From Paraphysomonas bandaiensis (Eukaryota; Protista; Chrysophyceae): 64,000 nt of DNA. The notes under the pieces were generated by a model. That model was not told the origin of the DNA. It saw only the letters and a list, made by a program, of their open reading frames with translations, and did no database searches. This document shows, in pieces, positions 2,741 through 50,242 of this stretch (its first letter is position 1; every line of letters starts with the position of its first letter). Made by a program: the position numbers and the translations under genes. Location: contig CBFFRP010000152.1 of assembly GCA_965644295.1 (NCBI GenBank), positions 1 to 64,000 of the forward strand. The letters run 5' to 3'.

Positions 2741-2835
2741 CATGTACATACATAGAGCCGATGTATATGAGATAGAGATGAGAGAGAGTAGTGTTATATA
2801 TCCCCACTAGTCAGTCATATCTCCTCAATCTCGAA

Positions 2836-3678
2836 ATGGAACATGATAGTGACAATACTAGTAGTGATGATGAAACAAATCATTCAATAAACATACGTCC
2901 CAAACATGATGTTCGTTATGTCTTTGTATTAATCGGATGTGTGGCTGTATTATTTATAGTATTAATATTTTATCAAATTAAAGAAATGGATATACAGTTA
3001 CATGATGATGTTCATCATATAACCACTGATTTAACACATATACAAAATATAACAAATGATGAAATGAATAGTAATACACAATCTAAGTGTCCATTGTTTT
3101 TAAATAAAACAATACTAACATTTGGGGATAGCTTAACTAGTGGTTTTCCTAGTGGACATCCCTATTCTCTTATGCTTTCTACCTTGTTACCAATGTCACA
3201 TGTGATTTCAAGTGGTATTCCAGGAGAGATGACATCGGAGATGCTATCCCGACTGACAAAAGAGCTGCCGATTCACAAACCTAATGTCATTATCATATTG
3301 GGTGGAACTAATGATATATTAAGAGATACAGCGGCAAATATTACGCTTGCTAATATCATCAACCTTCACGAATTGGCTAAACAGTGGATAAAATCGCGAA
3401 ACTATACAATTGCTCATACTATTGCTGTTACAATACCCGAGATTGAGAACGGCAGAAACGACAAAACAAGATACGAAATTAACAACGGCTTGAGGGAGTA
3501 TGCTCGTAGCACTAATGGATTTACTGTTATTATGGAATTAGAAGGCATGTATAAACAGTCCTTACCTCAGAATTCGATATACTGGAATGATGATTGTCTT
3601 CATTTTTCACCGTTAGGATATGATAAAGTAGGCGAGGTGGCTTATGAAGTTTTGTGCAGTTTAAGAAAGAATAGTTAA
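2836..3678 (+). CDS. SGNH/GDSL hydrolase with N-terminal TM anchor
   Basis: Blocks FGDSLT, SGIPGE, GGTND and DCLHFS; hydrophobic stretch YVFVLIGCVAVLFIVLIFY; first ATG at 2836. Confidence 0.88.
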   Translation: MEHDSDNTSSDDETNHSINIRPKHDVRYVFVLIGCVAVLFIVLIFYQIKEMDIQLHDDVHHITTDLTHIQNITNDEMNSNTQSKCPLFLNKTILTFGDSLTSGFPSGHPYSLMLSTLLPMSHVISSGIPGEMTSEMLSRLTKELPIHKPNVIIILGGTNDILRDTAANITLANIINLHELAKQWIKSRNYTIAHTIAVTIPEIENGRNDKTRYEINNGLREYARSTNGFTVIMELEGMYKQSLPQNSIYWNDDCLHFSPLGYDKVGEVAYEVLCSLRKNS

Positions 3679-8682: not shown

Positions 8683-9126
8683 GAATAGATTGAGAGCAGA
8701 AGCAATGATGCACAGATAAAAAAGTCCGTGTATTTGTCCATTTTTTACTGAATATACTCGCTTGCGATGAGATTTTGTGAGGAGACGTTTTTCGACAAAG
8801 CGGACCAGTTTGGTCCCACTTCTTTTTTTTGTATTGTGTTTTTTGGTATGGAACTTGAGTGTAGAGCTTTGAAATGACGAGTAGGACCATCTACAGTCCG
8901 ACAAGTGCGTGGAGGGCTGGTCCACTTTGTCATGTACGCTGCAATACCGGTATACACATACATACAGTACATATACACACGTGGATACAGACGGACACAT
9001 ATATGCAAAAAACGTCTCCGAGGGAGCTAAATCGAAACTATCCCATCCGAAGTATGAAAAATAGTTGAGAAAATATCCTGGAAACATCCGTATTTTGTGG
9101 CGCAGTGGGAACAAGGACCCTAAGGA

Positions 9127-9278
9127 CGTATCAGCAGACTGCTATATATTTTTGTTCAAAGATACCTTAGATATTGAGACAACAATTACGTGTATTCTAG
9201 CCGTAGTTGTACTGCAGTAATATAAAGTATATTTGCTTCAAATTATCTCCGAAAATGAAAATGCTGACTGTGGATACA
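9127..9278 (+). mobile_element. CGTATC-MITE copy 3
   Basis: cgtatcagca...tgtggataca; body aligns to the family. Confidence 0.8.
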
Positions 9279-9391
9279 CAATCCGGCAACAGAGAAGACT
9301 CCAATGGAGTCTATGGTGATTATCTGTGGCATATACAGTTGAAAGTGCATCTGATAATCATCTTTTCTCTTTCATTTCTCATTGTGCAAAC

Positions 9392-12085
9392 ATGCTTACA
9401 CTTACATGCATTCTTTTGCTTATATCGGCAGCCAGGGCATCTGCCAGTGCTTCATTTAAAGTTGATTCATCATTCAGAAATCTGGGAGATACATTGCAAA
9501 TATCTTACGTGAATTATTTTGCAGCATCGAATGAAGACTGGTTCTATTTAGTTCCGAAGAGTTATGGGGGAACACTGAGGGATTATTGGCGACAGGATGT
9601 TGATGCATCATGGGACGCGGAAGGATATACATGGTCGTATGTAGATCACTATAATGTAGACGTAGGATCTGTTCTGCTTACGCTCAACCCACAGTATCTA
9701 CAGAATGGAGAGTACAATCTGTATTACTTGGCAATCGATGGGTTTGATCTGCACATCTCCCCTTCTATCACTATAGTTATTGGGGACAACTGCTATGACT
9801 GGATCGATAAACGCAGTGGGGTAACTAGTGGCAAAACAACCAATCGATGTGACGCCGCTTATGGCCGATTTCGCTTCTCTCTTAACCGATTGGAAAAAAC
9901 ACCATGCATATCTACTGATGATTGTGCAGATAAATGTTGTTTCCATTTTCACTATGTAGAGGTTGTACGCACACATATAAGCAAAGACGGAGTATTCGGG
10001 GAGCTTTATGTTGATGGCATAGAACAAGTGAAGACTCTAGAAAATATCGATCATGTTATTCCAGCTGGAACATACTCTGGTACGTTTCGACGGTACAATA
10101 AGCGTGGCTACGTTACTCCTTTTGTTCTCGGGGTCCCGATCAAAGATCCTTGGATTTTATTCCATACTGGTAACTACCAGATAGATTCTAAAGGGTGTTT
10201 CTTAGTTGGGCTTACACATTCAATAGTTTCTTCAAAACCAAAAGCTGTCGTAAATTCACGTAAGGCAATGAAAAAACTCATGTCTGTGTTAGATTATTCG
10301 CAGTTGGAGTTATCAGGGGAGATTACTCAAACACCAAAACAGGATTTATTTTATGTTGACTTTAATATGTGCAATATCGAACCATTTATTATGAATGACT
10401 ACTCTGGTTTGACTGTACATCCACTTGTGATAACAGTTACATCAACATCAGAATTTGATGAAGCGAAGAAACGTTTTCTCACCCAACATACACCTCTAGG
10501 CGAATTTATAAGTAACGAGGAGGACTATAATGTTACCACTAAGTATATCGAATTCCTGGTGGAACATCCTTACGACAGATTCTACAGTTTTGTAAATGTA
10601 ACATACATTCGAATTGAAATTCAAATGAGAATTCGAAACGTTTTCAGTACTCGTGCAATTACAGTGTTCCCATCATTTGAGGGGTATTCAATGGACCCTA
10701 ATTGTGACTATTGCTCAACGCTCTATCTTCAAATTGCCATACATGGCCCTCTTGACAACACTGAGTGGGATCTTATTAAAAGTAGTATTACAGAGACACC
10801 CTTATGTTTGAACCAAACTCAGAGTACCTGCACAAACATATCTGCTGAGACATGTACGACTTGTCGAGATAACACCACATGCACAGAGGACTTCACATGT
10901 GATACACCTGATACAGGTAACTATTCCTCATCAGCTATTTACTTGTATCTGGAGGCAAAGTATTCTTCCAATTGGGACGGTGCTAATTTATTCATGAAAT
11001 CTCCTGAAGGGGACATTGTATTGTCAATGGCGCCTTCGAATGCAACAAAAAATCCTTTCCAGACGAATGTTTTTCCCACTGTTAGCGGAATGTACGAATT
11101 TGGAACGTATTTTCCAGAAGGTGAACCAGAATTTATCGATGCTTGCACGGTATGTAATGTCAGTTTCTGCCTTCGCATTGTTATGATATATATGTCTTTA
11201 ATATATAATATACGGATTGTGCAGATATACTGGATTGTTTCCTACAACAGCAGAAGTAATACTAGTTCCTTCTATGGAAGCATCAACTCGTCGGTACTGC
11301 TGCATTACAATGCAGACAAAGAGGTATGGTCGTTTGAAAGAGATTCAAATATTCTATCAGAAGAGGACTTGCTGGACTATTGTGTTCCCACGCATTTTCC
11401 TTCTGGACAACCCAGTGGTCTTCCAAGCAGTTCTCCCACATCCCCTTCGATGAGTCCATCTTCACATCCTTCATTGAATCCAACGACACTGCCAACTTCC
11501 ATTCCTTCATTTCTTCCGACAGCTCCAACTTTCTCTCCAACGACTTTTTGGGACAGTAACATCTTGTCTGCTCCAGAGGACATGGTATTATTTTCAGTTG
11601 TGACCCCACGGAGAGCTACTGGTGGCGAAATGTGTGCAACACCAATTAATTTTTTCAAATTGAGGATTGATAACGGTGCGTTATTTCCCACTTCCGGGTA
11701 TCTAAGCGGCGTTGTGTCAATTAAACATATCAAAGGAGGCTTTCGCCGGGCAGATATGTCTCTGAGATTAGCACTATATCGCACGAGTAATTCGACAATA
11801 GTCTTTTCCACCACGAATAATCTTTTGGAAGGTTCATCATTCCATAAAATTACAGGCGATCCTTACGCTGATGACCACAAGCATTGGGCTGTGGGTAAGG
11901 CAGATTATAAATTACTCATAAGGCTGCCATACTATGGTTTGGTAGACGACGGTGGGAACCAATTTCATTTCCCCATTGCCAGTGATTATACTTTGGAAAT
12001 TGACCTCAAAGTGTTGGGAAGAAGTGCCGGAGAAAGTGATATAGTTCACAGCTGTGTACGCATTACTGGAGTGTCTTTGTTCTAA
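9392..12085 (+). CDS. Secreted multidomain protein with DUF5675-like domain, Cys-rich segment and PS/PT repeats
   Basis: Signal peptide MLTLTCILLLISAARASA. GVFGELYVDG..KTLE..IPAGTY..ILFHTGNYQIDSKGCFLVG matches the DUF5675 pattern. PSxxP/PT linker. Probable in-frame intron at 11150-11224. Confidence 0.8.
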   Translation: MLTLTCILLLISAARASASASFKVDSSFRNLGDTLQISYVNYFAASNEDWFYLVPKSYGGTLRDYWRQDVDASWDAEGYTWSYVDHYNVDVGSVLLTLNPQYLQNGEYNLYYLAIDGFDLHISPSITIVIGDNCYDWIDKRSGVTSGKTTNRCDAAYGRFRFSLNRLEKTPCISTDDCADKCCFHFHYVEVVRTHISKDGVFGELYVDGIEQVKTLENIDHVIPAGTYSGTFRRYNKRGYVTPFVLGVPIKDPWILFHTGNYQIDSKGCFLVGLTHSIVSSKPKAVVNSRKAMKKLMSVLDYSQLELSGEITQTPKQDLFYVDFNMCNIEPFIMNDYSGLTVHPLVITVTSTSEFDEAKKRFLTQHTPLGEFISNEEDYNVTTKYIEFLVEHPYDRFYSFVNVTYIRIEIQMRIRNVFSTRAITVFPSFEGYSMDPNCDYCSTLYLQIAIHGPLDNTEWDLIKSSITETPLCLNQTQSTCTNISAETCTTCRDNTTCTEDFTCDTPDTGNYSSSAIYLYLEAKYSSNWDGANLFMKSPEGDIVLSMAPSNATKNPFQTNVFPTVSGMYEFGTYFPEGEPEFIDACTVCNVSFCLRIVMIYMSLIYNIRIVQIYWIVSYNSRSNTSSFYGSINSSVLLHYNADKEVWSFERDSNILSEEDLLDYCVPTHFPSGQPSGLPSSSPTSPSMSPSSHPSLNPTTLPTSIPSFLPTAPTFSPTTFWDSNILSAPEDMVLFSVVTPRRATGGEMCATPINFFKLRIDNGALFPTSGYLSGVVSIKHIKGGFRRADMSLRLALYRTSNSTIVFSTTNNLLEGSSFHKITGDPYADDHKHWAVGKADYKLLIRLPYYGLVDDGGNQFHFPIASDYTLEIDLKVLGRSAGESDIVHSCVRITGVSLF

Positions 12086-13192
12086 ACTGTGTAACTTTAT
12101 ATTAAGCAGAGTTAATGGTTTTGTTAAGTAACAATTTTGGAAAGTATTGAACAGTATAGATATAATGTAGTATAAGTTTGAGTTGTAGTTAGGGGTTTTA
12201 CAGTTTGGTTTAATGGATATTGATATGTATGACACTTTGGTAAATTGTTGACTGTAACAACATCACTGAAACAACAATTTAGGCAATATCACTGGTGTGT
12301 ATGCTTTTCTGTAGTATCTTTATTCTAATATATGCAGCGCTATTGACGCATTGCTAATGTTCATGCTAAGTAACACTTATGGAAAAAGTATTGAGAAATA
12401 TTTAAAGTAGCACGGTAAAGTTTTGAAGACAGAAAAGTCGTTGTCAGAGTTATCCTCTTTTGCCTTGATGGAATATTGACACGTATGGTGTTCCGAGCGT
12501 CTTGGTGAATGAATAATTGTTGTTTACCATGATATCCGCGATGCATAACAACATCGAAAAACCAACTTGGACAATACTACATATACTGTCTGTAATTGGC
12601 CTTGTGCTGATAAATGTGATTTCTAGGTAGTAATTTAATCGTATCGATTCACTTCTTTTTTGAGAGAGTTTAGTAGTCTAGAGTCTAGAGAATTATATCA
12701 GAGTGGATTGAATAATTCTTCATCGCAGTGAAGCAAATAACTATATTAACAGCACACCTCTGGTGCTCGCAGTAATGCACATGAAGACTCTCGTAGCATT
12801 TTACTTAGTTAGATAGTTGAGAATGTTAGAGTTATTACTTTTCGATGTCAACAGTGCAAAACATTATATGCTATAATCAGATTTTCAATATATGTACGAG
12901 GTTCGACTGATTATTAATTAACTTAAATTATCTATTAGCTACTCACTCTCACAAATGTCAGCAACCATTTTTACACTGAATAAATTTACGTATTTCAAAA
13001 CAAATAATAAATCGCGCTTGTCGTTTACATTTGTCCGCTCATTAGAGGAAACTGACACTGTAAGAACGCAATCCATATTCTAATTTATTCTAATTCTAAT
13101 GTCTTTATCAAATGCTTACAACCAGAGCGGCTTAAATTAGAATAAACTCTACCGCCACAATAAGACATACAAACATCAAAAATAGCTGCGTT

Positions 13193-17237: not shown

Positions 17238-17332
17238 ACCTATGCAGCCATATCATGCTATTCTATTGTTATACTATATCACTCATATATATCACACACA
17301 AACCACAACTCAACAAACCTCGAATAACCACA

Positions 17333-18013
17333 ATGGGAAACTGTTGTAATAAACCATCTACCTCCACTCCTCCCACTAATCAAAACACCGACCCAGCTCC
17401 TCATACAACAACTAACAACACTACTAACAATACAACAGCTACTAGTACTACTAAGATAACTAATCGGGCATGTTTTGGTGCAGGATGTTACTGGGGTACT
17501 GAAAAGTTTTTTAAAATTGATTTTGGTAGAAAACGATATCCAGAGAGTTTAATTAAAGGTGATGTGGGGTTTATGGGTCCACCTGGAGCTCAGCCTAATC
17601 CCTCATATAGAGAGGTATGTGAGGGCACAACAGGACATGTAGAAGTATTTGATATGGAATACTCTGGTGGAGAGATAGGAATGGAGAAAATGTATGAAGA
17701 GTTAGTTCGTTTCTTTTTTCAATTTCATGATCCTACTACCTTAAACCGGCAAAGAAATGATAAGGGGACACAGTATGCATCTGTTATATACTGTTATGAT
17801 TCAGTTCAAAAAGAAATTGCCACCCGTGTTAAGAATGAACTACAGGCTCTCATAGATGATGGAAAGGTATCGTGCTTCTCAGAGAAAACTGTGACGACTG
17901 CAATCAAAGATGCGACCGAATTCTTTCCTGCGCATGCGGAGCACCAGGAATATCTGATGAAAAACCCAAAAGGGTATTGCAACCACAAAATCAGATTTGC
18001 GGATTGGCCATAG
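17333..18013 (+). CDS. msrA: Peptide methionine sulfoxide reductase A with MGNCC N-terminus
   Basis: FGAGCYWGTE, PSYREVCEGTTGHVE, HDPTTLNRQ.ND.GTQY, AEHQEYL.KNPKGYC. Confidence 0.95.
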   Translation: MGNCCNKPSTSTPPTNQNTDPAPHTTTNNTTNNTTATSTTKITNRACFGAGCYWGTEKFFKIDFGRKRYPESLIKGDVGFMGPPGAQPNPSYREVCEGTTGHVEVFDMEYSGGEIGMEKMYEELVRFFFQFHDPTTLNRQRNDKGTQYASVIYCYDSVQKEIATRVKNELQALIDDGKVSCFSEKTVTTAIKDATEFFPAHAEHQEYLMKNPKGYCNHKIRFADWP

Positions 18014-23266: not shown

Positions 23267-26200
23267 ATGAGTGATCATAAATCAAGTCGTAGAAGATCAT
23301 CAGTGGCATTTATACAACAAACTAAACAAAGTGGTGTCTATAATGATACATGGGATGATGCAACAGTATGGATTACTTCATCATCATCATCTTCAATACA
23401 AGATGTATGGAAAAAGGCTGTGGTAGTTTCTAAAGTCCCACCTGATGAGGGTGAAGAGTGGGAGTTTAAAGTACGTGAGATTGATAGTGGAAATACAGTA
23501 TCTATACGTACACCTTCATTAGGAAAACAAGGACTTGAATATGTTTTAGTGAAACGCAGGGATGAAGGGTTGAAGGGTTCTGAAGTGCATGATATGACAT
23601 CGTTGCTTTATTTGAATGCACCAGAATTGTTGGAGTGTGTTAAGCAACGTTATATGGAGAAATCCATATACACATCTATAGGCCCAATTTTATTGGCTGT
23701 GAATCCTTTTGAGAGGTTGCCACTTTACTCTTCCGAAATTCTGAACAAATACAATGTAGATGACAATAGCCTCGGTCAGAAAGCGCAACCCCATGTTTTT
23801 GAAGTGGCAAACAGAGCGTACAGTAAAATGTTTGTTGATAAATTTCGCCCAGATGAGCGTGAGAACCAGTCTATCTTAGTCAATGGGGAGTCCGGAGCAG
23901 GGAAAACGGAATCGACGAAACACGTCCTTCATTTTTTAGCAGTTGTGTCTTCAAAAGTTGCATCACAGTGCATTCTTGGTGACGAGAGCAACCAGGATAT
24001 CGAGAACCAAATCCTGGCATCCAACCCTATCCTGGAGTCTTTCGGGAACGCCAAGACGTTGCGAAATAATAATTCTTCTAGATTCGGAAAATTCATTGAG
24101 TTACTGTACACCTCTGATGGGTACATCGAAGGTGCTGTTATGCGTACATATCTCCTGGAGACTATGCGCGTTGTCGGGCAGGGTACAGGGGAAAGGAACT
24201 ACCACATCTTCTACGAAGTGTTTGCGGGCCTCGCCCCGGCTGTTAAAAAGAGGTATGGGCTGACTGATCTAGCACATTTCCGCTATACCAATCAGAGCGG
24301 GGAGTTGTGCCGTCATGATGGGGAGTCAGATCTTGAGAACTTTGGTGACCTAAAGGATGCCTTGACCACGCTGGAGGTAGATGAGGACTTTCAGGACGAT
24401 GTGGATAAAGTGATAGCAGGCATCCTCCATCTCGGAAACCTCAGCTTCGAGGACTCGAGCAAAGCTGGGGAGGATGCAGCTGATTTTTCGCCCAGCAGTC
24501 AATCGAGGGAGACTGTGGATTTCGTATGTCAATTGCTGGGACTCCATGAATCAATGCTACTATCCGCTGTTGCGCGCAGGAGTGTGACTGTCGTCGGTAA
24601 TACCATAGAGAAAACTCTAAACTCAGAGTCTGCTGTGCATGCACGTGATTCGTTCGCGAAATTTTTATACAGTGCATTGTTCGCCTGGGTAGTCGCAAAG
24701 ATGAATGTATGTCTTGTGGGAGATGTCAATATAGAAGAGACGGCCTCATTCATCGGTGTGTTGGATATATTTGGATTTGAACATTTTGACCAAAACAGCT
24801 TTGAGCAGCTCTGTATTAATTATACAAACGAGAAGCTGCAAGACCACTTCAACTACTCTGTTTTCCGGAGTGAGCAGGAGGTGTATCAGCAGGAGGGCCT
24901 TAAGTGGACATTTGTGGAGTATCCAGATAACAGTGCACGATTGGATTTGATCGAACATAGCTCAGTTGGTATCCTCGCCATCTGTAATGAGCAACTCAAG
25001 ATGCCTAAATGCACAGACGAAAAGCTTGCGCAATCACTATACCAAAAGTGCGGAACTCACACGTACTTTCGCGCAACCCGTGCGGAGAAGGGAAAACTCG
25101 AGTTCACAATTCTCCACTACGCCTGCCCTGTCACGTACCAGACAGAGGGATTCTTGGATAAGAACCGCACAGAGAACCCCAAGGAACTGTATGATACACT
25201 GCGTAAATCTCGTAACGCATTGATGCGAGAGATGTACGGGGAGTGTATGGGTGCGGGGCGCACCAGCTTCTTTGGGGACATGCGATCATCTAATTCCTCT
25301 ATGAGTATAACCCAAGTTCGTGGTTTCAGTAGGCAGCCCTCAAACAGGTCTGTCGGTGGAGGCCTCACAAAGCAACCATCAGCAAAGTTCAACATTGCTA
25401 ACCGCTCTAGCCCGAAGCCCAGCGAGACTACCAAGTCCAGGCAACACAGATCGTCTATCGGTAAGAAAGTTACGAGTCTTTCATCACAATTTCAAACTCA
25501 GTTGTCTGAACTCATGGGAAAGATTCGGTCTACTCGCTCTCACTTTATCTGTTGTATAAAGCCAAATAGGCAAATGCAGGCTGGTGTTTTTGACAGTGAA
25601 ATGTGCGCGGATCAAATTCGGTGTGGGGGTTCTTTGGGAGCATTACAAGTGTTCAAAGCGGGATTTGCAAACCGATTGTCATTCGCGGCTTTCACGAATA
25701 GATTTTCAGCATTCGCTTTTGTGTCCGGAACTAATATGCTTACTCGCGACCTACAGTCAGCGATTGAGTTGGCGCGTACTACAGGCAGCCTAGTACACTG
25801 GAGGAGGGCTGCTGGATGTTTACTCGATATTGTACCGCTGTCTCATATGGTACTATCACTGGCCCTTAATGAGCCGCCTGATTGTGAGGTTGATATTGTT
25901 CGGGACATGCAGATGGGAAAGACACAGATATTTTTGAAGGCCGAGGCATTCGAGTTCTTGGAGAGGCTACACTTGCGAACGCGTAATTTGACAGCCCGGC
26001 GACTGCAGCTCCGGTGGAGGGCATGGAGAGTGTCTAAACACAACGAGAATCTCGGTATAAAAACGACGTCTGGGATGCTCGCGGCGCAAGAAGCAATGCG
26101 CTATTTTTCTGATTTCCGTCGTATCCAGGCGATGAAAAAAGTTTCTGCCACAATTGTGCTACAGAGACGCGCACGTATATTTTTAGCTGTGCACTACAGG

Positions 26201-27820
26201 AAGCTTATGCTTTCCCGTATATCTAACTTTCAGAGGCACTGCAGAAGGTATCTTGAATGGCGACGAGAAATGCGTTCCCGGGAGGCTGCTGTTCGTGTAG
26301 TTCAACACTATATTAGAGGTCTTTTGGCGCGCTTTCGGTGGTTACGGTTTCATCATGCAGTCATCCGCCTTCAATGCAATTTCCGTGGGAAAACTACTCG
26401 CAAGCGATTGAGGAATGAGCGTAATGCTCAGGAAAGAGGGATGTGGTGTATTGTTAGACTTCAGTCGCTTGCCCGAGGGCAAGCTGCTCGTGAAAAGTTT
26501 CATGCTATTCGTCGTGCTATGGTTAGTATGGAGTCGCCAGTTACAATTACTGTAGCCCTAACACTGTGCGTGATTGTTTTTGCAGATATCAAAACGGTTT
26601 GAAGATCAGATGAAGGCACAGATGAGAAAGAAAGAAATACTGGTCAGTGTCGTGTATTATTACAAGGAAATGACTGACTTTTATTCAGGCAAAATTGGAA
26701 GCAAAATTGGAAGAAGACCCTCATTTATTGGATACTCTGGAAGGTAGCTCTGGTGCTATTCCTCCAAGTAATGGAGGGCTTAAAGATGAAGAGATACAGC
26801 GTCTTCGAAACGAGTTAACTAATCTTCAACTTAAAGTTAAAAGCTTGGAGGAAGAAAACCATCGTCTTAAGGCCCAGTTAGAGGTTTCCGCAGTTGCGGC
26901 TTCCGGGGATCCGACTGGCCACAGCGTGTCCATGTGGTTGGAGCGTGTTGAAAAGCTCGAGCGTGAGAATCTTGCTCTTAAGAAAGGAAATCCTGGTATG
27001 GCTCGCTCCCGTAGTTCCTTTGCAACTGCTCGTGGTTCGTTTGTGGGATCTGCTGACGACCCGTCTTCTAAAAAGGGAGGAGATGCTAAGGAAGTTTTGA
27101 GGAGGCGTTTGTCTGCCACGTCATCTGCGAATGCGGTTTTCTCCAACGACGATCGACTCGACGCAGTCACTTTGTCCGCTAACTTACTGTCGAGTGACAA
27201 AACTGATAAAGACATGGAATCGCAACATCCTGATTGGATCAAGAAATTTTCTGATCAGCACAAGCGAGTATATTGGCGACATAAGGTTTGGCGATACATT
27301 TTCCCAAGTTAGTACAATAACTTGTTTTTAGGTTACGGGTAAAACCACTTGGACAGCCCCAGTATTAAGTACAAGCAAAGAAGTTGGTATTGCTGAGAAA
27401 CGCCAGCAGGATGTCGCGAGCAATGCTGCACCTTCAGCTCGACGGGAAGACACTGAGGATGAAGGTTTATCAGTACCTGAGCTGCAGATTGCCATTGAAA
27501 AACTTATGTCGGGATGGGTTGGATTGAAACTCAGCAGTACAAACTACCCGAAGGAGCGTACTATATCTGTTGATCCGACCACCCAGATTCTGGCATGGAA
27601 GAAGACTGGTGGTAAGATGGAAGGTTGCTTAAATTTGGATACTGTCAAACGAATCACCAGAGGAAAGAAGAGTCGGACTCTTGAAAAGTCAAAAGGCCTT
27701 GATGCGAGTTTGTGTCTCTCTGTGCATTACTTGAAAACATCGTTGGATTTACAACTCGCCAGTGAAGCAGAGAGGGATATGATGTACTTTGGCCTGAAAG
27801 AACTACTTAAGGTCGAATAA
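23267..27820 (+). CDS. Myosin heavy chain: motor, IQ motifs, coiled coil, WW, C-terminal PH (4 exons)
   Basis: GESGAGKT, NNNSSRFGKF, LDIFGFE; several IQ-like motifs. WW domain HPDWIKKFSDQHKRVYWRHK|VTGKTTWTAP spans an intron. PH-like end (SLDLQLASEAERDMMYFGLKELL). Confidence 0.93.
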
Positions 27821-45100: not shown

Positions 45101-48100
45101 CGGTCTACCAAGACAGCAGTGATGGTTGATGGCATATCTTCCGGCTCTAAATCTGTTGAGTCAGTAGGAAAAGCAGCAATATCCACATATTTATTTTCGT
45201 CTTCCTCAAACCTTGCATCTAGCCCCATCTTAACTTGATCCAAAACAGATTCTGCAATTCGTTGTTGCTTTAACTTCAACGCTAGCGCCCTATCACTTAT
45301 TGATACAGACTCATCAGAACCTGCAGTAACATAGAAGGAGCGTGAGTCCAGGTAAACTCGCTCGACAGCGTACTGAGAGTCCATCTTCATTGCATTCATT
45401 AACTCAGACATCAGCGAATCTGTTGCCTTGAAGCTTGCCTGATCCGCCACTGGACAAAATATCGATTTAAGCAGCCCTATCACTCTTGAAGTCAACAACC
45501 TACCTATTCGTCTCAATTCCTCGGTAAGTACCGTCTCCTGCATGGCATCTAGTTTGGCTCGGAACTTCTCGGCATAGTCCATGTACTCCTTCATCCAGTC
45601 TCCAGCAAACCCTAGGTCTTTATCGTTCTCAACGAGCTCAATGCGAAGTTTCAAATGCTCACACAATCGTTCCATGACAAAGTCTTCATCAGTTAACCAT
45701 TTCACTCTATCTATGGTGTCTTTAAACCTCTCTGTCAGAATCAAACTACAGTTAGTGCAATTAAAGTACTCTTGGCGGTCTACCTTTTATGACGGCTAGT
45801 CGTCTGCAATTTCCTCTGATATGATGTGTCAGCCACCACTTAGTGGAATTTATATGCTCTATTCGATGTGTACATGCCCCTCTTTTCAAAAACAAGCTTT
45901 TAACTTTAGCGTTGAGATGAAAAAGTTCCTTCGGTTCAAGAGAGTTCATGCCTGCTTGCAGAATTATTTCGTTTTTTCTGTGCTCCTGCTTAAATGCTTT
46001 CCGTTGCTCCCTTAACTTCTCCTCCATTTTAGGAAATTTCTGTATCAGCTCCAACCAGTGCGTATTGTTTGCCTCTATCATCTGACACACTTTTCAGCTG
46101 TATAGTACACAAAATGAGAATGTACCTGAATAGCTTGACAGTATTCCTCGAATATATCAGAAAATAACTTATTACGAGCATTAACCCTCCGTTGCTGTAC
46201 ATCGTAGAGCACCCGCTTCTCAACAGCTGCTTTCCTAATCGCAAGTCTACGTGCCTCTTCTTTTGCGGACTTTTTTATGTATTTCTTTTTCTTCTTTTTG
46301 AAATCTACACGGAATTTAATACCCACCTTCTTCTGGAAATACAACCTCACGGAATATACTCTATAACGTCGCTGTATGACGACTGCAGCGCGATGAGCAT
46401 TGTCACACCTAAACGATACGTCTTCCAATTTTCGCTGATTTGCTTTCGCACGGACGTATTTCCTGGCTACAAGCTGTCGATAGCAGTTGGCGATTTTCGT
46501 AGCAGCATTATGTTTTTGAGCGGATTCTTCAGCCGCCTTGGCCGCCTCAATGGCCTTCTTTGCAGCGAGTTGCTCCATTTCCTTAGCAAGATTCCGTTCC
46601 TTCTGAATTCTTTGTATCTCCGCACTGCTTTTCAAAAATCCAACCAAATATCTAGCAAATATACATTAATCCGATATAAAATAGATACCATGCATGTGCT
46701 CACTTGATGTCATAAGTTGCTTTCTGAACCATATCCATATGATATATAAGTGATGTATTCGACTCTTTTACGTGAACGACCCGCGGCTCTATCATATCCA
46801 TGTGATGGTTACGCTTGGAACCATCCACATGCGCCTTAAAAGCACAAAAAAAGCAATATCCTTTCACACAAACTTTGCAGAAAATTAACCGAAGCCTCAA
46901 GCCGCACAATTCACAGTGCAGGGTACGCTTCATATTTTGCCGAACTTCAAATCCATTTAGCATAGGGTCAAATAGCGTGGTATCTGATGCCGGCTCTTCT
47001 CGATGGGGCTCGATAGGCCAGAAAGTAAAAGTATATTGGTGTACTTTTTTCTGCTCACTGTCACGGCTAATATTTTCTAATCCAAAAGTGAGAGCTGCTT
47101 GAGAGGCATACATGGACTGCGCTGCGCCTTTGATAACGACATCACTCCGCAGAAGCGCAGGCGGATCACTGAAAAAGGCTAGCTTTCTACCATCAGCCCG
47201 AGAAACGTACGGTTTTTTATCAAATGCCTGGGGAACAATGAATGGGAGTTTTGGAGCCAGATCGAATTTTGCAACAGCACCACTAGACGCATATTCAATA
47301 TCTGGTACATTCGTCCGATTGGCTTCAATGCCCTTAATCATATCTTGTACCTCTTTCTTTTTTCTTGCAATTTGGTACGCTTTTACTCTCTCTTGATATT
47401 CACCCCTCGTGGAAAAGCTGCCGAGTGATGCCATTAAATCGTCGCCTTCCTCTGGAGCGCATGAGTGAATGACCGTCTTCCAAAATGGAGGAAGTTTCAT
47501 ATATATCTGAGCAAGAATGTATCTATCTGAGAGACGGACAATCATTCCCCTGGCAATTTTCTGTATCTTTTTCGCGGAATCATTCATGGATTTAATACGC
47601 ACGAATGTGGTGCGACCTTTCCACCCTCTCACGATTCGTTGTACCAGAACGATAGATCGCAACAGCGGTAAAAGATTCTCACGAAACTTGCGTTGAATTC
47701 TTGTCGCACAATCAATAATATATAAGCGGTCCCTGATCAGTGATAGTTTGTATTCTCGACGCTTATACCTATACCATCTTTGCAGATACTTCGTCGTGTT
47801 CACTAGTTTCAGTTCACGATAGCTTACGGCTTTGCGGTATACAAATTGGATTTTTCTAGCCGCCCACTGCTCATCCATCTGGCGACGGATAAAGCTGTCG
47901 CGATACGCCCATATATCGCGCTTAGAATGAGGAAAGAGTCCACCCCACTCGTATGTTTTTCCGTCCAAGATTGTCGAATGAGTTGAATAGCAACTCCTCC
48001 CGAAAACAGCATGCCAAAATGTCTTCGGGTTTTCAAGATTCGCACTCTTCACTAGGTTTCTCAAGGTTACCGATGCCCCACTGCTCATCGACGAGTTCTG

Positions 48101-49966
48101 ACGCTTAAATAAGCTGGCCGCCGTGCTGAGACGACTTGTTCGCCTTGAGTCAGTAGAGTTCCTTCCAGTAGGAGTACTAACCCCGCTTCCCCTAGATGAT
48201 ACAGTTTCGTCATCCTGCGAATGCTGCTCTTCATTTCCTTTGTCATTCAACTCAACTCCAGAATCTGCAGGGCCCCGAGGAAGAGTGACATGCTCCAACG
48301 CAAAACACTTAGACAGTACAGCTGCCATGCCAGGAATTGATAGCTTATCTGCGCCCAACAAATCCAGTCGCTTCAAAAATAAATGTCCTGCAAAATCTGA
48401 TGCTTCCCCACGACCACCCCGTAACCAAGATGAGGTCATTGTGATACCGCACTGGTTGCGTATGTCCAGTACACGTAGACGCCGCAGATACATAAAAATT
48501 GCCTTGAGTGTGTTATCCGTGTACTGCTGCACTCTTCCCCCCCATGCATCTGTATTACCAACGACAGTGCCGATGTGAAGTTCCAGCAGCCCTGGACATC
48601 CTTCGCAGAGCCTCTCAATTCCCTCTTCACCAAGTCCAAGACAGTCATTTGCCCGTAGAATCTTTAAATTGTGACAGTGGCTCCCCAGAGCGGCCAGAGC
48701 CGCGTTGTCAATACGCGATAAACCAGAAATAGTAAGCTCTTCCAGTGACGTATGAGAGGTGGCCATCATTGCCACGCCGGTTGAAGTCACGAGTGCACAG
48801 TTGTGCATTAGAAGCCGCTTCAACCTGGACTCACCAGCTGGCAGGTCCAGTCCGTTGCAGAACATGTCGTCAGTAAGCCCAGCGTTTCCAGATATATCTA
48901 ATGACTCCAGTACTACACAGTATTCTAGCACTCTACGCACTGCAACAGACTCTAGCTTACGAGTGCCCAAATATGATATGTCAAGGTGAACAAGAGTGCG
49001 CCTGCACTGACAGCCTGCAATGAGTACGACCGAACTGGAGTCGACTTGCTTGCAGTTCCGGATGTTAATACGCTTCAAGTGTGGGCTACCAAGAGCAAGT
49101 CCTTGTACAAACCCATTTTCCACCTGTGGAATTGCGGATAAATCGACCGTTTCCAGATCAGGTAATGCAGCACCAATCCAGTCTAAAGAGTCTGTCAATA
49201 GTGGGCAACCAGAAACATCTAGGTGTCGAATAGATCGAGTGACGTACTGCTTCATTGGTTTTTCACTAAAACCATATGTAGAATCAGCAGTGATTACTAT
49301 ACCAACAAAAGTAAGACTGGTGCAACTCGACACATCCAAATCATCCAGCTTTAAACATTCAAACAGTACCCGTTTAACGCCAACATGTGTGACGTTAGAG
49401 TTATTCGAGCATTTAAATGTTGTCAGCACGTCACAAAAAGCGGAGTTCGAAATAGCAAACAGCGCGGTGTCGGTAATATCAGGACAGTTTGAGACATCGA
49501 GACCAGATAGGTGAGGCAACTGACTTGCAAATGATTCGACATCACTATCCTGCAAAACAGACACACCTTTAAGGTTTAAATGTTGCAATTTCGAAAGAGC
49601 ACAAATGTAGCCTAATCCAACTTCTGTTAATAAACTACAGCTCGATAAATTAATAGATTCCAAACTATCAGCAAACGCTCTTAGATTGAACACAAACTTA
49701 TCATCCACTTCATCATTGTCAGATACATTAATATCTTTCAACTGGAATCCATCTAATTTATATCCATTTAATGCCTCTTGTATATTACTCCAATATCTTA
49801 AATCTAATGATGATACAGGTGATCCTTGTTGATGTAATGTGTGATACTGTAATGTATCAGTGTCCGGACAGTGACTATATAAATATTTCTTTAATGCACA
49901 TGGTACTGTACCGTCTTTACTTCTTTGAAAATGTGGATGAGGTTCTGGTGGTTTGATATGTTTCAT
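42123..49966 (-). CDS. Giant (~2,450 aa, 11 exons) protein: cysteine-type LRRs, IQ, B-box, IQ, coiled coil, MABP-like, EF-hands
   Basis: Ten GT-AG introns join the ORFs 46700-50035, 46078, 45761, 44833, two small exons, 44258, 43759, 42579, 42388 and 42123 in frame. LxxLxLxxCxxxTD repeats; IQRKFR/IQKIARG; CELC..C..C....C..C...H......HH; EF-like DKKRTTRITTDD and DSEHEGLVSHAD. Confidence 0.82.
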
Positions 49967-50242
49967 TATATGAATGAATGTTGAATGAGTGTGTGAGTGA
50001 TTGATTAATGTGATCAATACATGTAAGGAGTTCAAGTCTTATGTATAGTGTATATATACATATATATATATATAGAGGTGATGTATTACTGTATCGTGAA
50101 TAGAGTAACAGTACTCATAGATACTGTAGTGAGGATCAAGTAACAACTCAATAGAGTTAACAGAATGATTTATAAGAAGAAGAAATTCTACTTAAAGTGT
50201 ATGTGTACACACACAGAGCACATGTACAGTAACTGCCTGCTA

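What the first reader, a model, noticed from the sequence alone, without database searches (positions are those of the whole stretch)
9392..12085. Eukaryotic secreted mosaic protein carrying a bacterial/phage DUF5675 domain with intact His/Cys motif
Seen: signal peptide; a beta-rich N-terminal domain; at ~9953-10290 VVRTHISKDGVFGELYVDG..KTLE..IPAGTY..PFVLGVP...ILFHTGNYQIDSKGCFLVG...VVNSRKAMKKL; then a Cys-rich segment, PS/PT repeats and an unknown C-terminal domain. Known: DUF5675 proteins are small stand-alone bacterial and phage proteins, and their HxGN(x5)GC motif resembles the His/Cys catalytic motif of YkuD-type L,D-transpeptidase/peptidase folds acting on peptidoglycan. Inference: a horizontally acquired cell-wall-active module grafted onto a protist surface scaffold, possibly for bacterial prey digestion or antibacterial defence. 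This is the best candidate here for an undescribed system.
Basis: partly seen in the sequence, partly recalled or inferred. Interest (0 to 1): 0.8.

Follow-up and report, generated by a model that had tools for sequence, protein, structure and literature searches.

The report
Diatom secreted protein with phage-lysin-like domain
A marine diatom expresses a spliced gene for a secreted 872-residue protein whose core is a phage/bacterial DUF5675 domain with the fold and His/Cys motif of peptidoglycan L,D-peptidases, so an alga with no cell-wall peptidoglycan of its own probably carries a captured bacterial-wall enzyme.

Summary
Window 9392-12085 (+) is a real two-exon gene. An MMETSP transcript and RNA contigs match the spliced 872-aa product exactly.

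The genome is a diatom's: it has at least 7 silicon-transporter genes, and a myosin gene lies on the same contig.

- **Domain:** residues 191-301 hit Pfam DUF5675 (E 1e-19). All 14 invariant or near-invariant family positions are kept, including His258 and Cys269.
- **Fold:** for an AlphaFold model (core pLDDT above 90), the best 20 solved-structure matches are all YkuD-fold L,D-transpeptidases or carboxypeptidases (Z 9.6-5.3). The next match scores 2.8.
- **Phage relatives:** many are fused to a peptidoglycan-binding domain or follow small membrane-protein genes, as lysins do.
- **Origin:** the diatom domain groups exclusively with four long, eukaryote-like metagenomic proteins that share flanking Cys motifs. 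So the capture is old, not a recent graft.
- **Substrate:** the genome has no YkuD, PBP or Mur-ligase genes, so any peptidoglycan substrate must be bacterial.

Prey digestion is unlikely in a diatom. A role against or on associated bacteria is inferred, not shown. I found no paper describing eukaryotic DUF5675 proteins. I class it as a new variant of a known kind: a domesticated peptidoglycan enzyme.

The parts
9293..12227 (+). Transcribed region (5' UTR about 80-100 nt, 3' UTR about 140 nt)
   Evidence: RNA contigs of runs X6 and X7 span 9314/9293 to 12217/12227
9392..11149 (+). Coding exon 1 (residues 1-586)
11150..11224 (+). 75-nt GT..AG intron, in frame and without a stop, so it reads through as 25 false residues
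   Evidence: The joint is seen in two RNA runs. MMETSP protein P0001 lacks exactly these 25 residues
11225..12085 (+). Coding exon 2 (residues 587-872 plus TAA)
9392..9454 (+). Signal peptide (about residues 1-21). The cleavage site was not computed
   Evidence: It is the most hydrophobic 19-residue window of the protein and is followed by Ala/Ser-rich small residues. There is no other transmembrane segment
9455..9781 (+). N-terminal beta-rich domain (residues 22-130), possibly an Ig/SKICH-like sandwich. This is a weak lead only
   Evidence: ESM Atlas structure rows, TM about 0.55. No paralogue in the genome
9782..9952 (+). Cys module (residues 131-187, 6 Cys) conserved just upstream of the domain in the eukaryote-type clade
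   Evidence: Invariant C...C...CC pattern in alignments A1 and A3. Model confidence here is low
9953..10294 (+). DUF5675 core (residues 188-301), YkuD-like fold
   Evidence: Pfam E 1.1e-19; pLDDT above 90; Z 9.6-5.3 to 20 YkuD-fold structures
10163..10165 (+). His258 codon. This His is the only fully invariant position of the family
   Evidence: Alignment A2. hhalign places it on the LdtB active-site His
10196..10198 (+). Cys269 codon, the putative nucleophile and the only Cys in the core
   Evidence: At least 90% conserved in A2. Aligned to the LdtB Cys
10295..10456 (+). Eukaryote-specific loop (residues 302-344, disordered in the model) followed by the last beta-strand of the domain (residues 345-351)
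   Evidence: pLDDT 37-43 for the loop and 94 for the strand. A D-Y...V motif is conserved in A3
10457..10801 (+). Middle region (residues 356-470) with no family match
10802..10921 (+). Cys/Thr-rich knot (residues 471-510). Its C-x2-C-x-D...F-T-C motif is shared with P0003 and P0016
11387..11551 (+). Pro/Ser/Thr-rich linker (residues 641-695)
   Evidence: 67% P+S+T; a weak PT-repeat hit
11552..12082 (+). C-terminal all-beta domain (residues 696-872). One paralogue sits at the C-terminus of a sulfatase-domain gene elsewhere in the genome
   Evidence: G000:C259:72085-72447, 28% identity over 131 aa. The model is of low confidence, pLDDT 50

Best explanation
This is a nuclear diatom gene for a secreted, probably glycosylated, multidomain protein. 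Its catalytic core is a DUF5675 domain that was captured long ago from a phage or bacterium. DUF5675 is a compact branch of the YkuD (L,D-transpeptidase/carboxypeptidase, MEROPS C82-like) fold. Inferred mechanism: Cys269, activated by His258, attacks the bond after the L-centre of the third residue of a peptidoglycan stem peptide and forms a thioester. That thioester is then resolved by water (L,D-carboxy- or endopeptidase) or by an amine (exchange or transpeptidation). The diatom makes no peptidoglycan, so the substrate would be the walls or shed muropeptides of bacteria living on or around the cell. The role would then be defence, control of the associated microbiota, or scavenging. The flanking domains (N-terminal beta domain, Cys module, Cys knot, P/S/T stalk, C-terminal beta domain shared with a sulfatase gene) would hold and present the enzyme outside the cell. 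Shown here: gene structure, expression, domain identity, fold, conserved residues, phage/bacterial affinity. Inferred: secretion, substrate, chemistry, biological role.
For: Gene reality and host: the spliced mRNA matches exactly. Identical pieces occur in a poly(A) marine metatranscriptome. A myosin gene lies on the same contig. The genome has at least 7 silicon-transporter genes. The gene is single copy. Domain: Pfam DUF5675 E 1e-19, and all 14 invariant or near-invariant family positions are kept. Fold: AF2 core pLDDT above 90. The top 20 of 48,161 chains are all YkuD-fold enzymes, including Pgp2 at Z 9.6, Csd6 9.0, Bd1075 8.4, Ldt enzymes, Tlde1a 7.8 and DpaA 6.6; the next match scores Z 2.8. 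Foldseek also puts Ldt enzymes on top, though weakly. hhalign's only aligned stretch puts H-x-G-N...G-C on LdtB's H-G-T-N...H-G-C. A 2026 preprint independently calls DUF5675 'C82-like'. Link to peptidoglycan: a phage cluster of 107 members pairs DUF5675 with PG_binding_1 in 96% of members. One phage relative is annotated as an L,D-carboxypeptidase/transpeptidase. Phage genes sit next to small membrane-protein genes at the end of late modules. Origin: 569 relatives were found, and 144 of the best 150 are at most 230 aa. Phage hits reach 36-38% identity. The eukaryote-type clade is exclusive, with SH-aLRT 93 and UFBoot/SH-aLRT 82/88. Exogenous substrate: the genome has no YkuD, Amidase_2, PBP transpeptidase or Mur-ligase genes.
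Against: No DUF5675 protein has a published enzymatic assay; the preprint says the function is still unknown. No sequence method links DUF5675 to YkuD with significance: there is no PF03734 hit, no PDB hit by sequence, and hhalign probability is 1.3%. The canonical (S/T)-H-G-C-h-N motif and its His-Cys spacing are not kept. A secreted enzyme cannot reach the peptidoglycan of intact Gram-negative bacteria, which dominate around diatoms. Secretion was inferred by eye, without SignalP. The taxa of the four sister proteins are unknown.
Confidence: 0.6

Rival explanations
1. The captured fold was repurposed. It still does Cys/His acyl-transfer chemistry, but on a non-peptidoglycan substrate, for example cross-linking or trimming the diatom's own extracellular wall or mucilage proteins or amines.
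For: The eukaryote-type clade has its own added Cys module and a 43-residue insertion. Most members are membrane-anchored. The C-terminal domain is shared with a sulfatase-domain gene, which suggests a matrix-directed module. Known YkuD enzymes also attach proteins to amines (LdtA-C join Lpp to peptidoglycan, established knowledge).
Against: All family-wide conserved positions, not only His and Cys, are retained. This is what one expects if the ancestral substrate pocket is still under selection. No diatom substrate with an L,D peptide bond is known.
Confidence: 0.2
2. It is a non-catalytic peptidoglycan-binding sensor or lectin at the cell surface. This would parallel animal PGRPs, which are built on a phage amidase fold.
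For: Sister proteins are type I membrane proteins with short cytoplasmic tails, a receptor-like layout. One Vitrella repeat has lost the Cys.
Against: His and Cys are invariant in all five members of the clade at only 27-35% overall identity. This diatom protein has no membrane anchor.
Confidence: 0.1
3. The protein is sent to the plastid or periplastid compartment rather than outside the cell. A Phe follows the Ala/Ser-rich end of the signal peptide, as in the diatom ASAFAP import motif.
For: The order ...A-S-A-S-A-S-F-K-V... read from the sequence. The role of a Phe at +1 in diatom plastid import is established knowledge.
Against: Acidic residues follow within 4-12 positions. There are ten N-glycosylation sequons, 21 Cys and a mucin-like stalk. 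Homologues have plasma-membrane-type anchors. The genome has no peptidoglycan synthesis genes that could supply a plastid substrate. The cleavage site was not computed.
Confidence: 0.07
4. It is an assembly contaminant or a mis-called bacterial or phage ORF.
For: The domain family is prokaryotic and viral.
Against: The intron is spliced in two RNA runs. GC matches its surroundings. Myosin and other eukaryotic genes lie on the contig. The assembly lacks the common bacterial wall genes PBP, Mur ligase and YkuD.
Confidence: 0.01

Closest known systems
DUF5675 (Pfam PF18925; phrog_1501) proteins of phages and bacteria
   Same: Full-length domain match. All conserved positions are kept, including the H-x-G-N-x6-G-C motif. 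36-42% identity to the best phage and metagenomic members.
   Different: Those are mostly proteins of 110-170 aa without a leader, or are fused to PG_binding_1. Here the domain sits inside an 872-aa secreted eukaryotic protein. It has an added Cys module upstream and a 43-residue loop before the last strand.
YkuD-fold L,D-transpeptidases and L,D-carboxypeptidases (MEROPS C82: LdtMt2, Ldtfm, E. coli LdtA-E, Csd6, Pgp2, Bd1075, DpaA)
   Same: Same fold (Z up to 9.6, rmsd 2.8 A over 108 residues). A His and a Cys lie in the equivalent sequence stretch.
   Different: No significant sequence similarity. There is no PF03734 hit. The His-Cys spacing is shorter (10 against about 15-17 residues), and the His of the H-G-C triplet and the trailing Asn/Arg are absent. 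Activity is untested.
Tlde1 type VI secretion effectors (Salmonella Tlde1a, 7uma)
   Same: A small stand-alone YkuD-fold enzyme used as a weapon against other bacteria's peptidoglycan. Z 7.8.
   Different: Tlde1 is injected by a bacterial secretion system into the periplasm. The diatom protein would have to act from outside.
Domesticated bacterial or phage wall enzymes in eukaryotes (tick Dae2 from Tae amidases; GH25 lysozymes; PGRPs on the T7 lysozyme fold). Cited from my own knowledge, not checked here
   Same: A peptidoglycan-active module of prokaryotic or viral origin, fixed in a eukaryotic genome with a signal peptide and an intron.
   Different: Different fold and chemistry (a YkuD-like Cys peptidase), a different host (a photosynthetic diatom) and a much larger mosaic architecture.
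Vitrella brassicaformis CEM21648.1 (UniProt A0A0G4G0P8, auto-named 'DUF5675 domain-containing protein')
   Same: A eukaryotic protein with a signal peptide that carries DUF5675.
   Different: It has three tandem repeats (one with Cys replaced by Gly), no shared flanking Cys module, and forms a separate clade. A single origin with the diatom-type clade is not rejected (AU p 0.34).

Membership tests
DUF5675 (PF18925) | Match to the Pfam model above its gathering score, over the whole model | tested here: met
   70.9 bits against 26.7, model positions 2-113 of 114. Own-genome scan gives 75.8 bits.
DUF5675 (PF18925) | Family-invariant residues (Arg, Gly, Leu-Glu, Gly-x-Tyr, His-x-Gly-Asn, Gly-Cys, Gly, Ser) | tested here: met
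   R193, G203, L216, E217, G226, Y228, V248, H258, G260, N261, G268, C269, G273 and S289 are all present.
YkuD / L,D-transpeptidase superfamily (PF03734, MEROPS C82) | Sequence match to the YkuD model | tested here: not met
   No PF03734 hit at E up to 1. A profile search against PDB sequences finds no Ldt enzyme. hhalign probability is 1.3%.
YkuD / L,D-transpeptidase superfamily (PF03734, MEROPS C82) | YkuD beta-sandwich fold | tested here: met
   The 20 best of 48,161 chains are all YkuD-fold, Z 9.6-5.3, and the next scores 2.8.
YkuD / L,D-transpeptidase superfamily (PF03734, MEROPS C82) | Catalytic His and Cys in the H-x(14-17)-(S/T)-H-G-C-h-N motif | tested here: inconclusive
   His and Cys are present and are aligned to those of LdtB. 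However, the spacing is 10 residues, and the second His and the Asn are missing. The 3D positions could not be inspected.
YkuD / L,D-transpeptidase superfamily (PF03734, MEROPS C82) | Acyl-enzyme chemistry on the peptidoglycan stem peptide | not testable with these tools
   Needs muropeptide assays.
Phage endolysin / virion lysin (for the donor family) | Fusion to wall-binding domains, or a place in a lysis cassette | tested here: inconclusive
   A phage cluster carries PG_binding_1 in 96% of 107 members. Small membrane-protein genes lie next to the DUF5675 gene in a Salinibacter phage and in two phage-like contigs. In Vibrio phage 355E48.1 the gene sits among nucleotide-metabolism genes. No lysis assay is on record.
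Horizontally acquired gene fixed in a eukaryote | Eukaryotic gene structure and expression | tested here: met
   Spliced GT..AG intron, RNA contigs and a poly(A) metatranscriptome. Eukaryotic neighbouring genes.
Horizontally acquired gene fixed in a eukaryote | Nested within prokaryotic or viral diversity, and patchy among eukaryotes | tested here: met
   Only 6 long eukaryote-type proteins are among the 150 best of 569 relatives. They form an exclusive clade inside phage/bacterial sequences with support 93 and 82/88. The donor is unresolved.

The most novel reading that the evidence does not exclude
The five long proteins define an undescribed family of surface enzymes or receptors found in several eukaryotic lineages. 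The family would derive from one ancient capture of a phage lysin-type YkuD-like domain, and protists (diatoms, a groundwater eukaryote and others) would use it as an innate antibacterial effector or peptidoglycan sensor, as animals use PGRPs and lysozymes. This diatom would have turned the membrane-anchored form into a secreted one by exchanging the anchor for a stalk and a C-terminal binding domain.
Probability: 0.3. Interest if true: 0.75.

Novelty: new variant of a known kind. Interest (0 to 1): 0.6.

Why it matters
Diatoms live surrounded by bacteria that can feed them or kill them, and few diatom proteins are known that act directly on bacterial cells. If this protein cuts or remodels peptidoglycan, it would be a molecular handle on how a major primary producer controls its microbiome. 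It would also be the first functional assignment for a domain found in phages and in bacteria of over 500 genera (the preprint's figure). And it would add a YkuD-type enzyme to the short list of bacterial wall enzymes that eukaryotes have domesticated. The gene is single copy, expressed in culture and at sea, and the prediction reduces to two residues (His258, Cys269), so the test is straightforward.

Tried and rejected
- **Word-index protein searches.** The whole protein found only its own transcript. The domain alone found nothing. The alignment of eukaryote-type proteins found only its first member. Low-complexity words probably swamped the candidate lists, so these blanks say little.
- **Metagenome scan** with residues 130-470 found no relative.
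- **The genome search 'relatives'** is impossible for this genome.
- **Other family and structure searches** found nothing: NCBIfam and PADLOC had no hit, and PDB sequence searches gave only a low-complexity hit or chance hits.
- **Foldseek against PDB** gave no significant match (best E 0.09), although Ldt enzymes topped the list. The exhaustive aligner was needed.
- **AlphaFold of the C-terminal domain** with a two-sequence alignment gave pLDDT 50, so I did not search with it.
- **ESM Atlas leads for the N- and C-terminal parts** are weak.
- **AU test** could not separate one eukaryotic acquisition from two (p 0.34).
- **Neighbour ORFs on the sister proteins' contigs** gave no taxonomic clue, so their eukaryotic nature rests on architecture only.
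- **Two 1111-aa ORFs in the window** are unrelated.
- **Exon joining.** The spliced product was available as database protein P0001.
Full report
**1. What is at the locus**

The + strand carries one long open frame from 9326 to 12085.

A word-index search with the read-through translation returned one protein, an MMETSP transcript product of 872 residues (P0001). It is identical to the window's translation except for a 25-residue gap.

Laying public runs on 9100-12400 showed the same thing at the nucleic-acid level:
- Two RNA-type contigs (runs X6 and X7, from different studies) cover 9314/9293 to 12217/12227.
- Both skip 75 bases with GT..AG ends, while the DNA contig (X4) keeps them.
- So the gene has two coding exons (9392-11149 and 11225-12085) and a 75-nt in-frame intron.
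- Pieces identical to the gene also occur in a poly(A)-selected marine metatranscriptome (X13).

All work on the mature protein used P0001 by reference.

**2. Whose gene it is**

- The contig also encodes a myosin motor (E 5e-203), a GDSL lipase and a methionine sulfoxide reductase.
- GC content across the gene matches its surroundings.
- The 62.5-Mb assembly has at least seven silicon-transporter genes, so the host is a diatom. Earlier notes of this scan say the same.
- DUF5675 is single copy in the genome.
- The assembly has no YkuD, Amidase_2, penicillin-binding transpeptidase or Mur-ligase match. This argues against bacterial contamination. It also means the alga makes no peptidoglycan of its own.

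**3. Architecture of the 872-residue product**

| Residues | Feature |
|---|---|
| about 1-21 | Hydrophobic leader; no other membrane segment in the protein |
| 22-130 | Beta-rich domain |
| 131-187 | Module with six Cys |
| 188-301 | DUF5675 core |
| 302-344 | Disordered loop |
| 345-351 | Confidently modelled final strand of the domain |
| 356-470 | Unassigned region |
| 471-510 | Cys/Thr-rich knot |
| 511-640 | Further unassigned stretch |
| 641-695 | Pro/Ser/Thr stalk |
| 696-872 | All-beta C-terminal domain |

There are ten N-glycosylation sequons and 21 Cys, which fits an extracellular protein. The C-terminal domain has one paralogue in the genome, at the end of a sulfatase-domain gene on another contig (28% identity over 131 residues). 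It therefore looks like an accessory module shared by secreted enzymes. The other parts have no paralogues.

**4. The domain**

Pfam DUF5675 matches at E 1.1e-19 over essentially the whole model, and phrog_1501 matches at 6e-14. I aligned 119 family members. In that alignment His258 is the only fully invariant position. Thirteen further positions are at least 90% conserved, among them Gly260, Asn261, Gly268 and Cys269, and the diatom protein keeps all of them.

The AlphaFold model of residues 130-360 has pLDDT above 90 over the core.
- Foldseek against the PDB gave no significant hit, although L,D-transpeptidases filled the top of the list.
- The exhaustive aligner over 48,161 representative chains was decisive. 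Ranks 1-20 are all YkuD-fold enzymes: Pgp2 (Z 9.6), Csd6 (9.0), M. smegmatis Ldt (8.5), Bd1075 (8.4), LdtMt2, Ldtfm, Tlde1a (7.8), B. subtilis YkuD, DpaA (6.6), YcbB and others. Rank 21 drops to Z 2.8.

By sequence the link is not detectable. A profile-profile comparison with five E. coli enzymes aligned only 18 columns at low probability. Those columns put the H-x-G-N...G-C stretch on LdtB's active-site H-G-T-N...H-G-C, His on His and Cys on Cys.

A 2026 preprint reached the same structural conclusion. It calls DUF5675 'C82-like' and states that the function is unknown.

My reading is that DUF5675 works like a YkuD enzyme but is not a member of PF03734. The canonical motif and its spacing are not kept.

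**5. What the relatives do**

An exhaustive profile search found 569 relatives. Of the best 150, 144 are at most 230 residues, and most have no leader.

Named phage hits at 36-38% identity include Salinibacter and Vibrio phages and a microvirus.

Context evidence for action on peptidoglycan:
- An ESM Atlas cluster of 107 mostly viral proteins pairs DUF5675 with PG_binding_1 in 96% of members, the classic lysin layout.
- BFVD holds a phage relative named as an L,D-carboxypeptidase/transpeptidase, and DUF5675 modules inside virion-size proteins of about 1200 residues.
- In Salinibacter phage M8CRM-1 the gene follows a giant structural gene and lies shortly upstream of two membrane-protein genes.
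- In two phage-like contigs a tail-anchored ORF of about 50 residues lies just upstream, at the boundary between the late and early modules.
- One Vibrio phage shows no such context.

Action on peptidoglycan is therefore well motivated, but no assay has shown it.

**6. Origin**

After the self hit, the best relatives are long proteins: P0003 (555 aa), P0004 (662 aa), P0016 (551 aa) and P0132 (352 aa), all from metagenome or run assemblies. One of them appears, from its contig name, to come from a groundwater sample. A further long relative is a Vitrella brassicaformis protein with three repeats.

The four unnamed proteins share several features with the diatom protein:
- the upstream C...C...CC module;
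- the D-Y...V strand after the inserted loop;
- in two of them, the C-x2-C-x-D...F-T-C knot;
- three of them end in a membrane anchor and a short tail.

On the domain alone the five form an exclusive clade. Support is SH-aLRT 93 among 155 rows, and UFBoot/SH-aLRT 82/88 among 70 rows. Their sister group is unresolved. Candidates include P0018, which is phage-borne.

Vitrella forms its own clade, but a single origin with the others is not rejected (p 0.34).

So the domain was captured from the phage/bacterial pool well before this diatom lineage arose, and it then evolved as part of a eukaryote-type surface protein. In this diatom the membrane anchor is replaced by a stalk and a C-terminal domain. 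The taxa of the sister proteins remain unknown.

**7. Function and rivals**

The most likely reading (0.6) is a secreted Cys/His L,D-peptidase-type enzyme that acts on bacterial peptidoglycan or muropeptides around the cell.

Prey digestion is unlikely, because diatoms do not engulf bacteria (established knowledge).

Rival readings:
- Repurposing to a non-peptidoglycan substrate (0.2).
- A non-catalytic sensor (0.1). The invariant His and Cys across the clade argue against this.
- Plastid or periplastid targeting, suggested by a Phe after the Ala/Ser run (0.07). The acidic residues that follow, the glycosylation sequons and the missing peptidoglycan pathway argue against this.
- Contamination (about 0.01). 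The splicing refutes it.

**8. Novelty**

Only three papers in the searched library mention DUF5675, and none deals with eukaryotes. UniProt auto-labels the Vitrella protein.

Eukaryotes domesticating bacterial wall enzymes is a known theme. A YkuD-like DUF5675 domain in a diatom mosaic protein, and the small eukaryote-type clade around it, are to my knowledge undescribed. I class it as a new variant of a known kind and score interest at 0.6.

Noticed in passing
L005:171-581 (+) (MT135445.1, Microvirus sp., 5428 nt, reverse complement): This is the best named phage match to the diatom domain (37% identity). It is an unannotated 136-codon DUF5675 ORF in a small ssDNA microvirus whose record annotates only the replication protein. 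It could be that virus's wall-cutting or lysis enzyme.
   Followed up: partly
G000:C259:72085-72447 (L016:1462-1911): The C-terminal domain of the finding has a single paralogue (28% identity). It forms the last exon of a gene whose upstream exons match the Sulfatase family. This may be a shared, unnamed C-terminal module of secreted diatom enzymes.
   Followed up: partly
L020:7767-8477 and L021:1071-1785: Two phage-like contigs show the same three-gene arrangement. A tail-anchored membrane ORF of about 50 residues lies upstream of a 158-aa DUF5675 gene, and a trypsin-like protease gene lies on the opposite strand. The arrangement sits at the boundary of the structural and replication modules.
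   Followed up: partly
P0108 (Vitrella brassicaformis CEM21648.1): A chromerid alga has a 1028-aa protein with a signal peptide and three DUF5675 repeats, plus a possible degenerate fourth. One repeat has Gly in place of the motif Cys.
   Followed up: partly
G000:C127:25957-26403: A marginal GH25 lysozyme-family match (27.2 bits, at the cut-off) elsewhere in the diatom genome. It is another possible peptidoglycan-active gene.
   Followed up: no
window 23267-26602 (+), 2791-3678 (+), 17255-18013 (+): Neighbouring genes are a myosin motor (E 5e-203), a GDSL lipase and a methionine sulfoxide reductase. The second 1111-aa ORF, at 46700-50035 (-), is unrelated to the myosin.
   Followed up: partly
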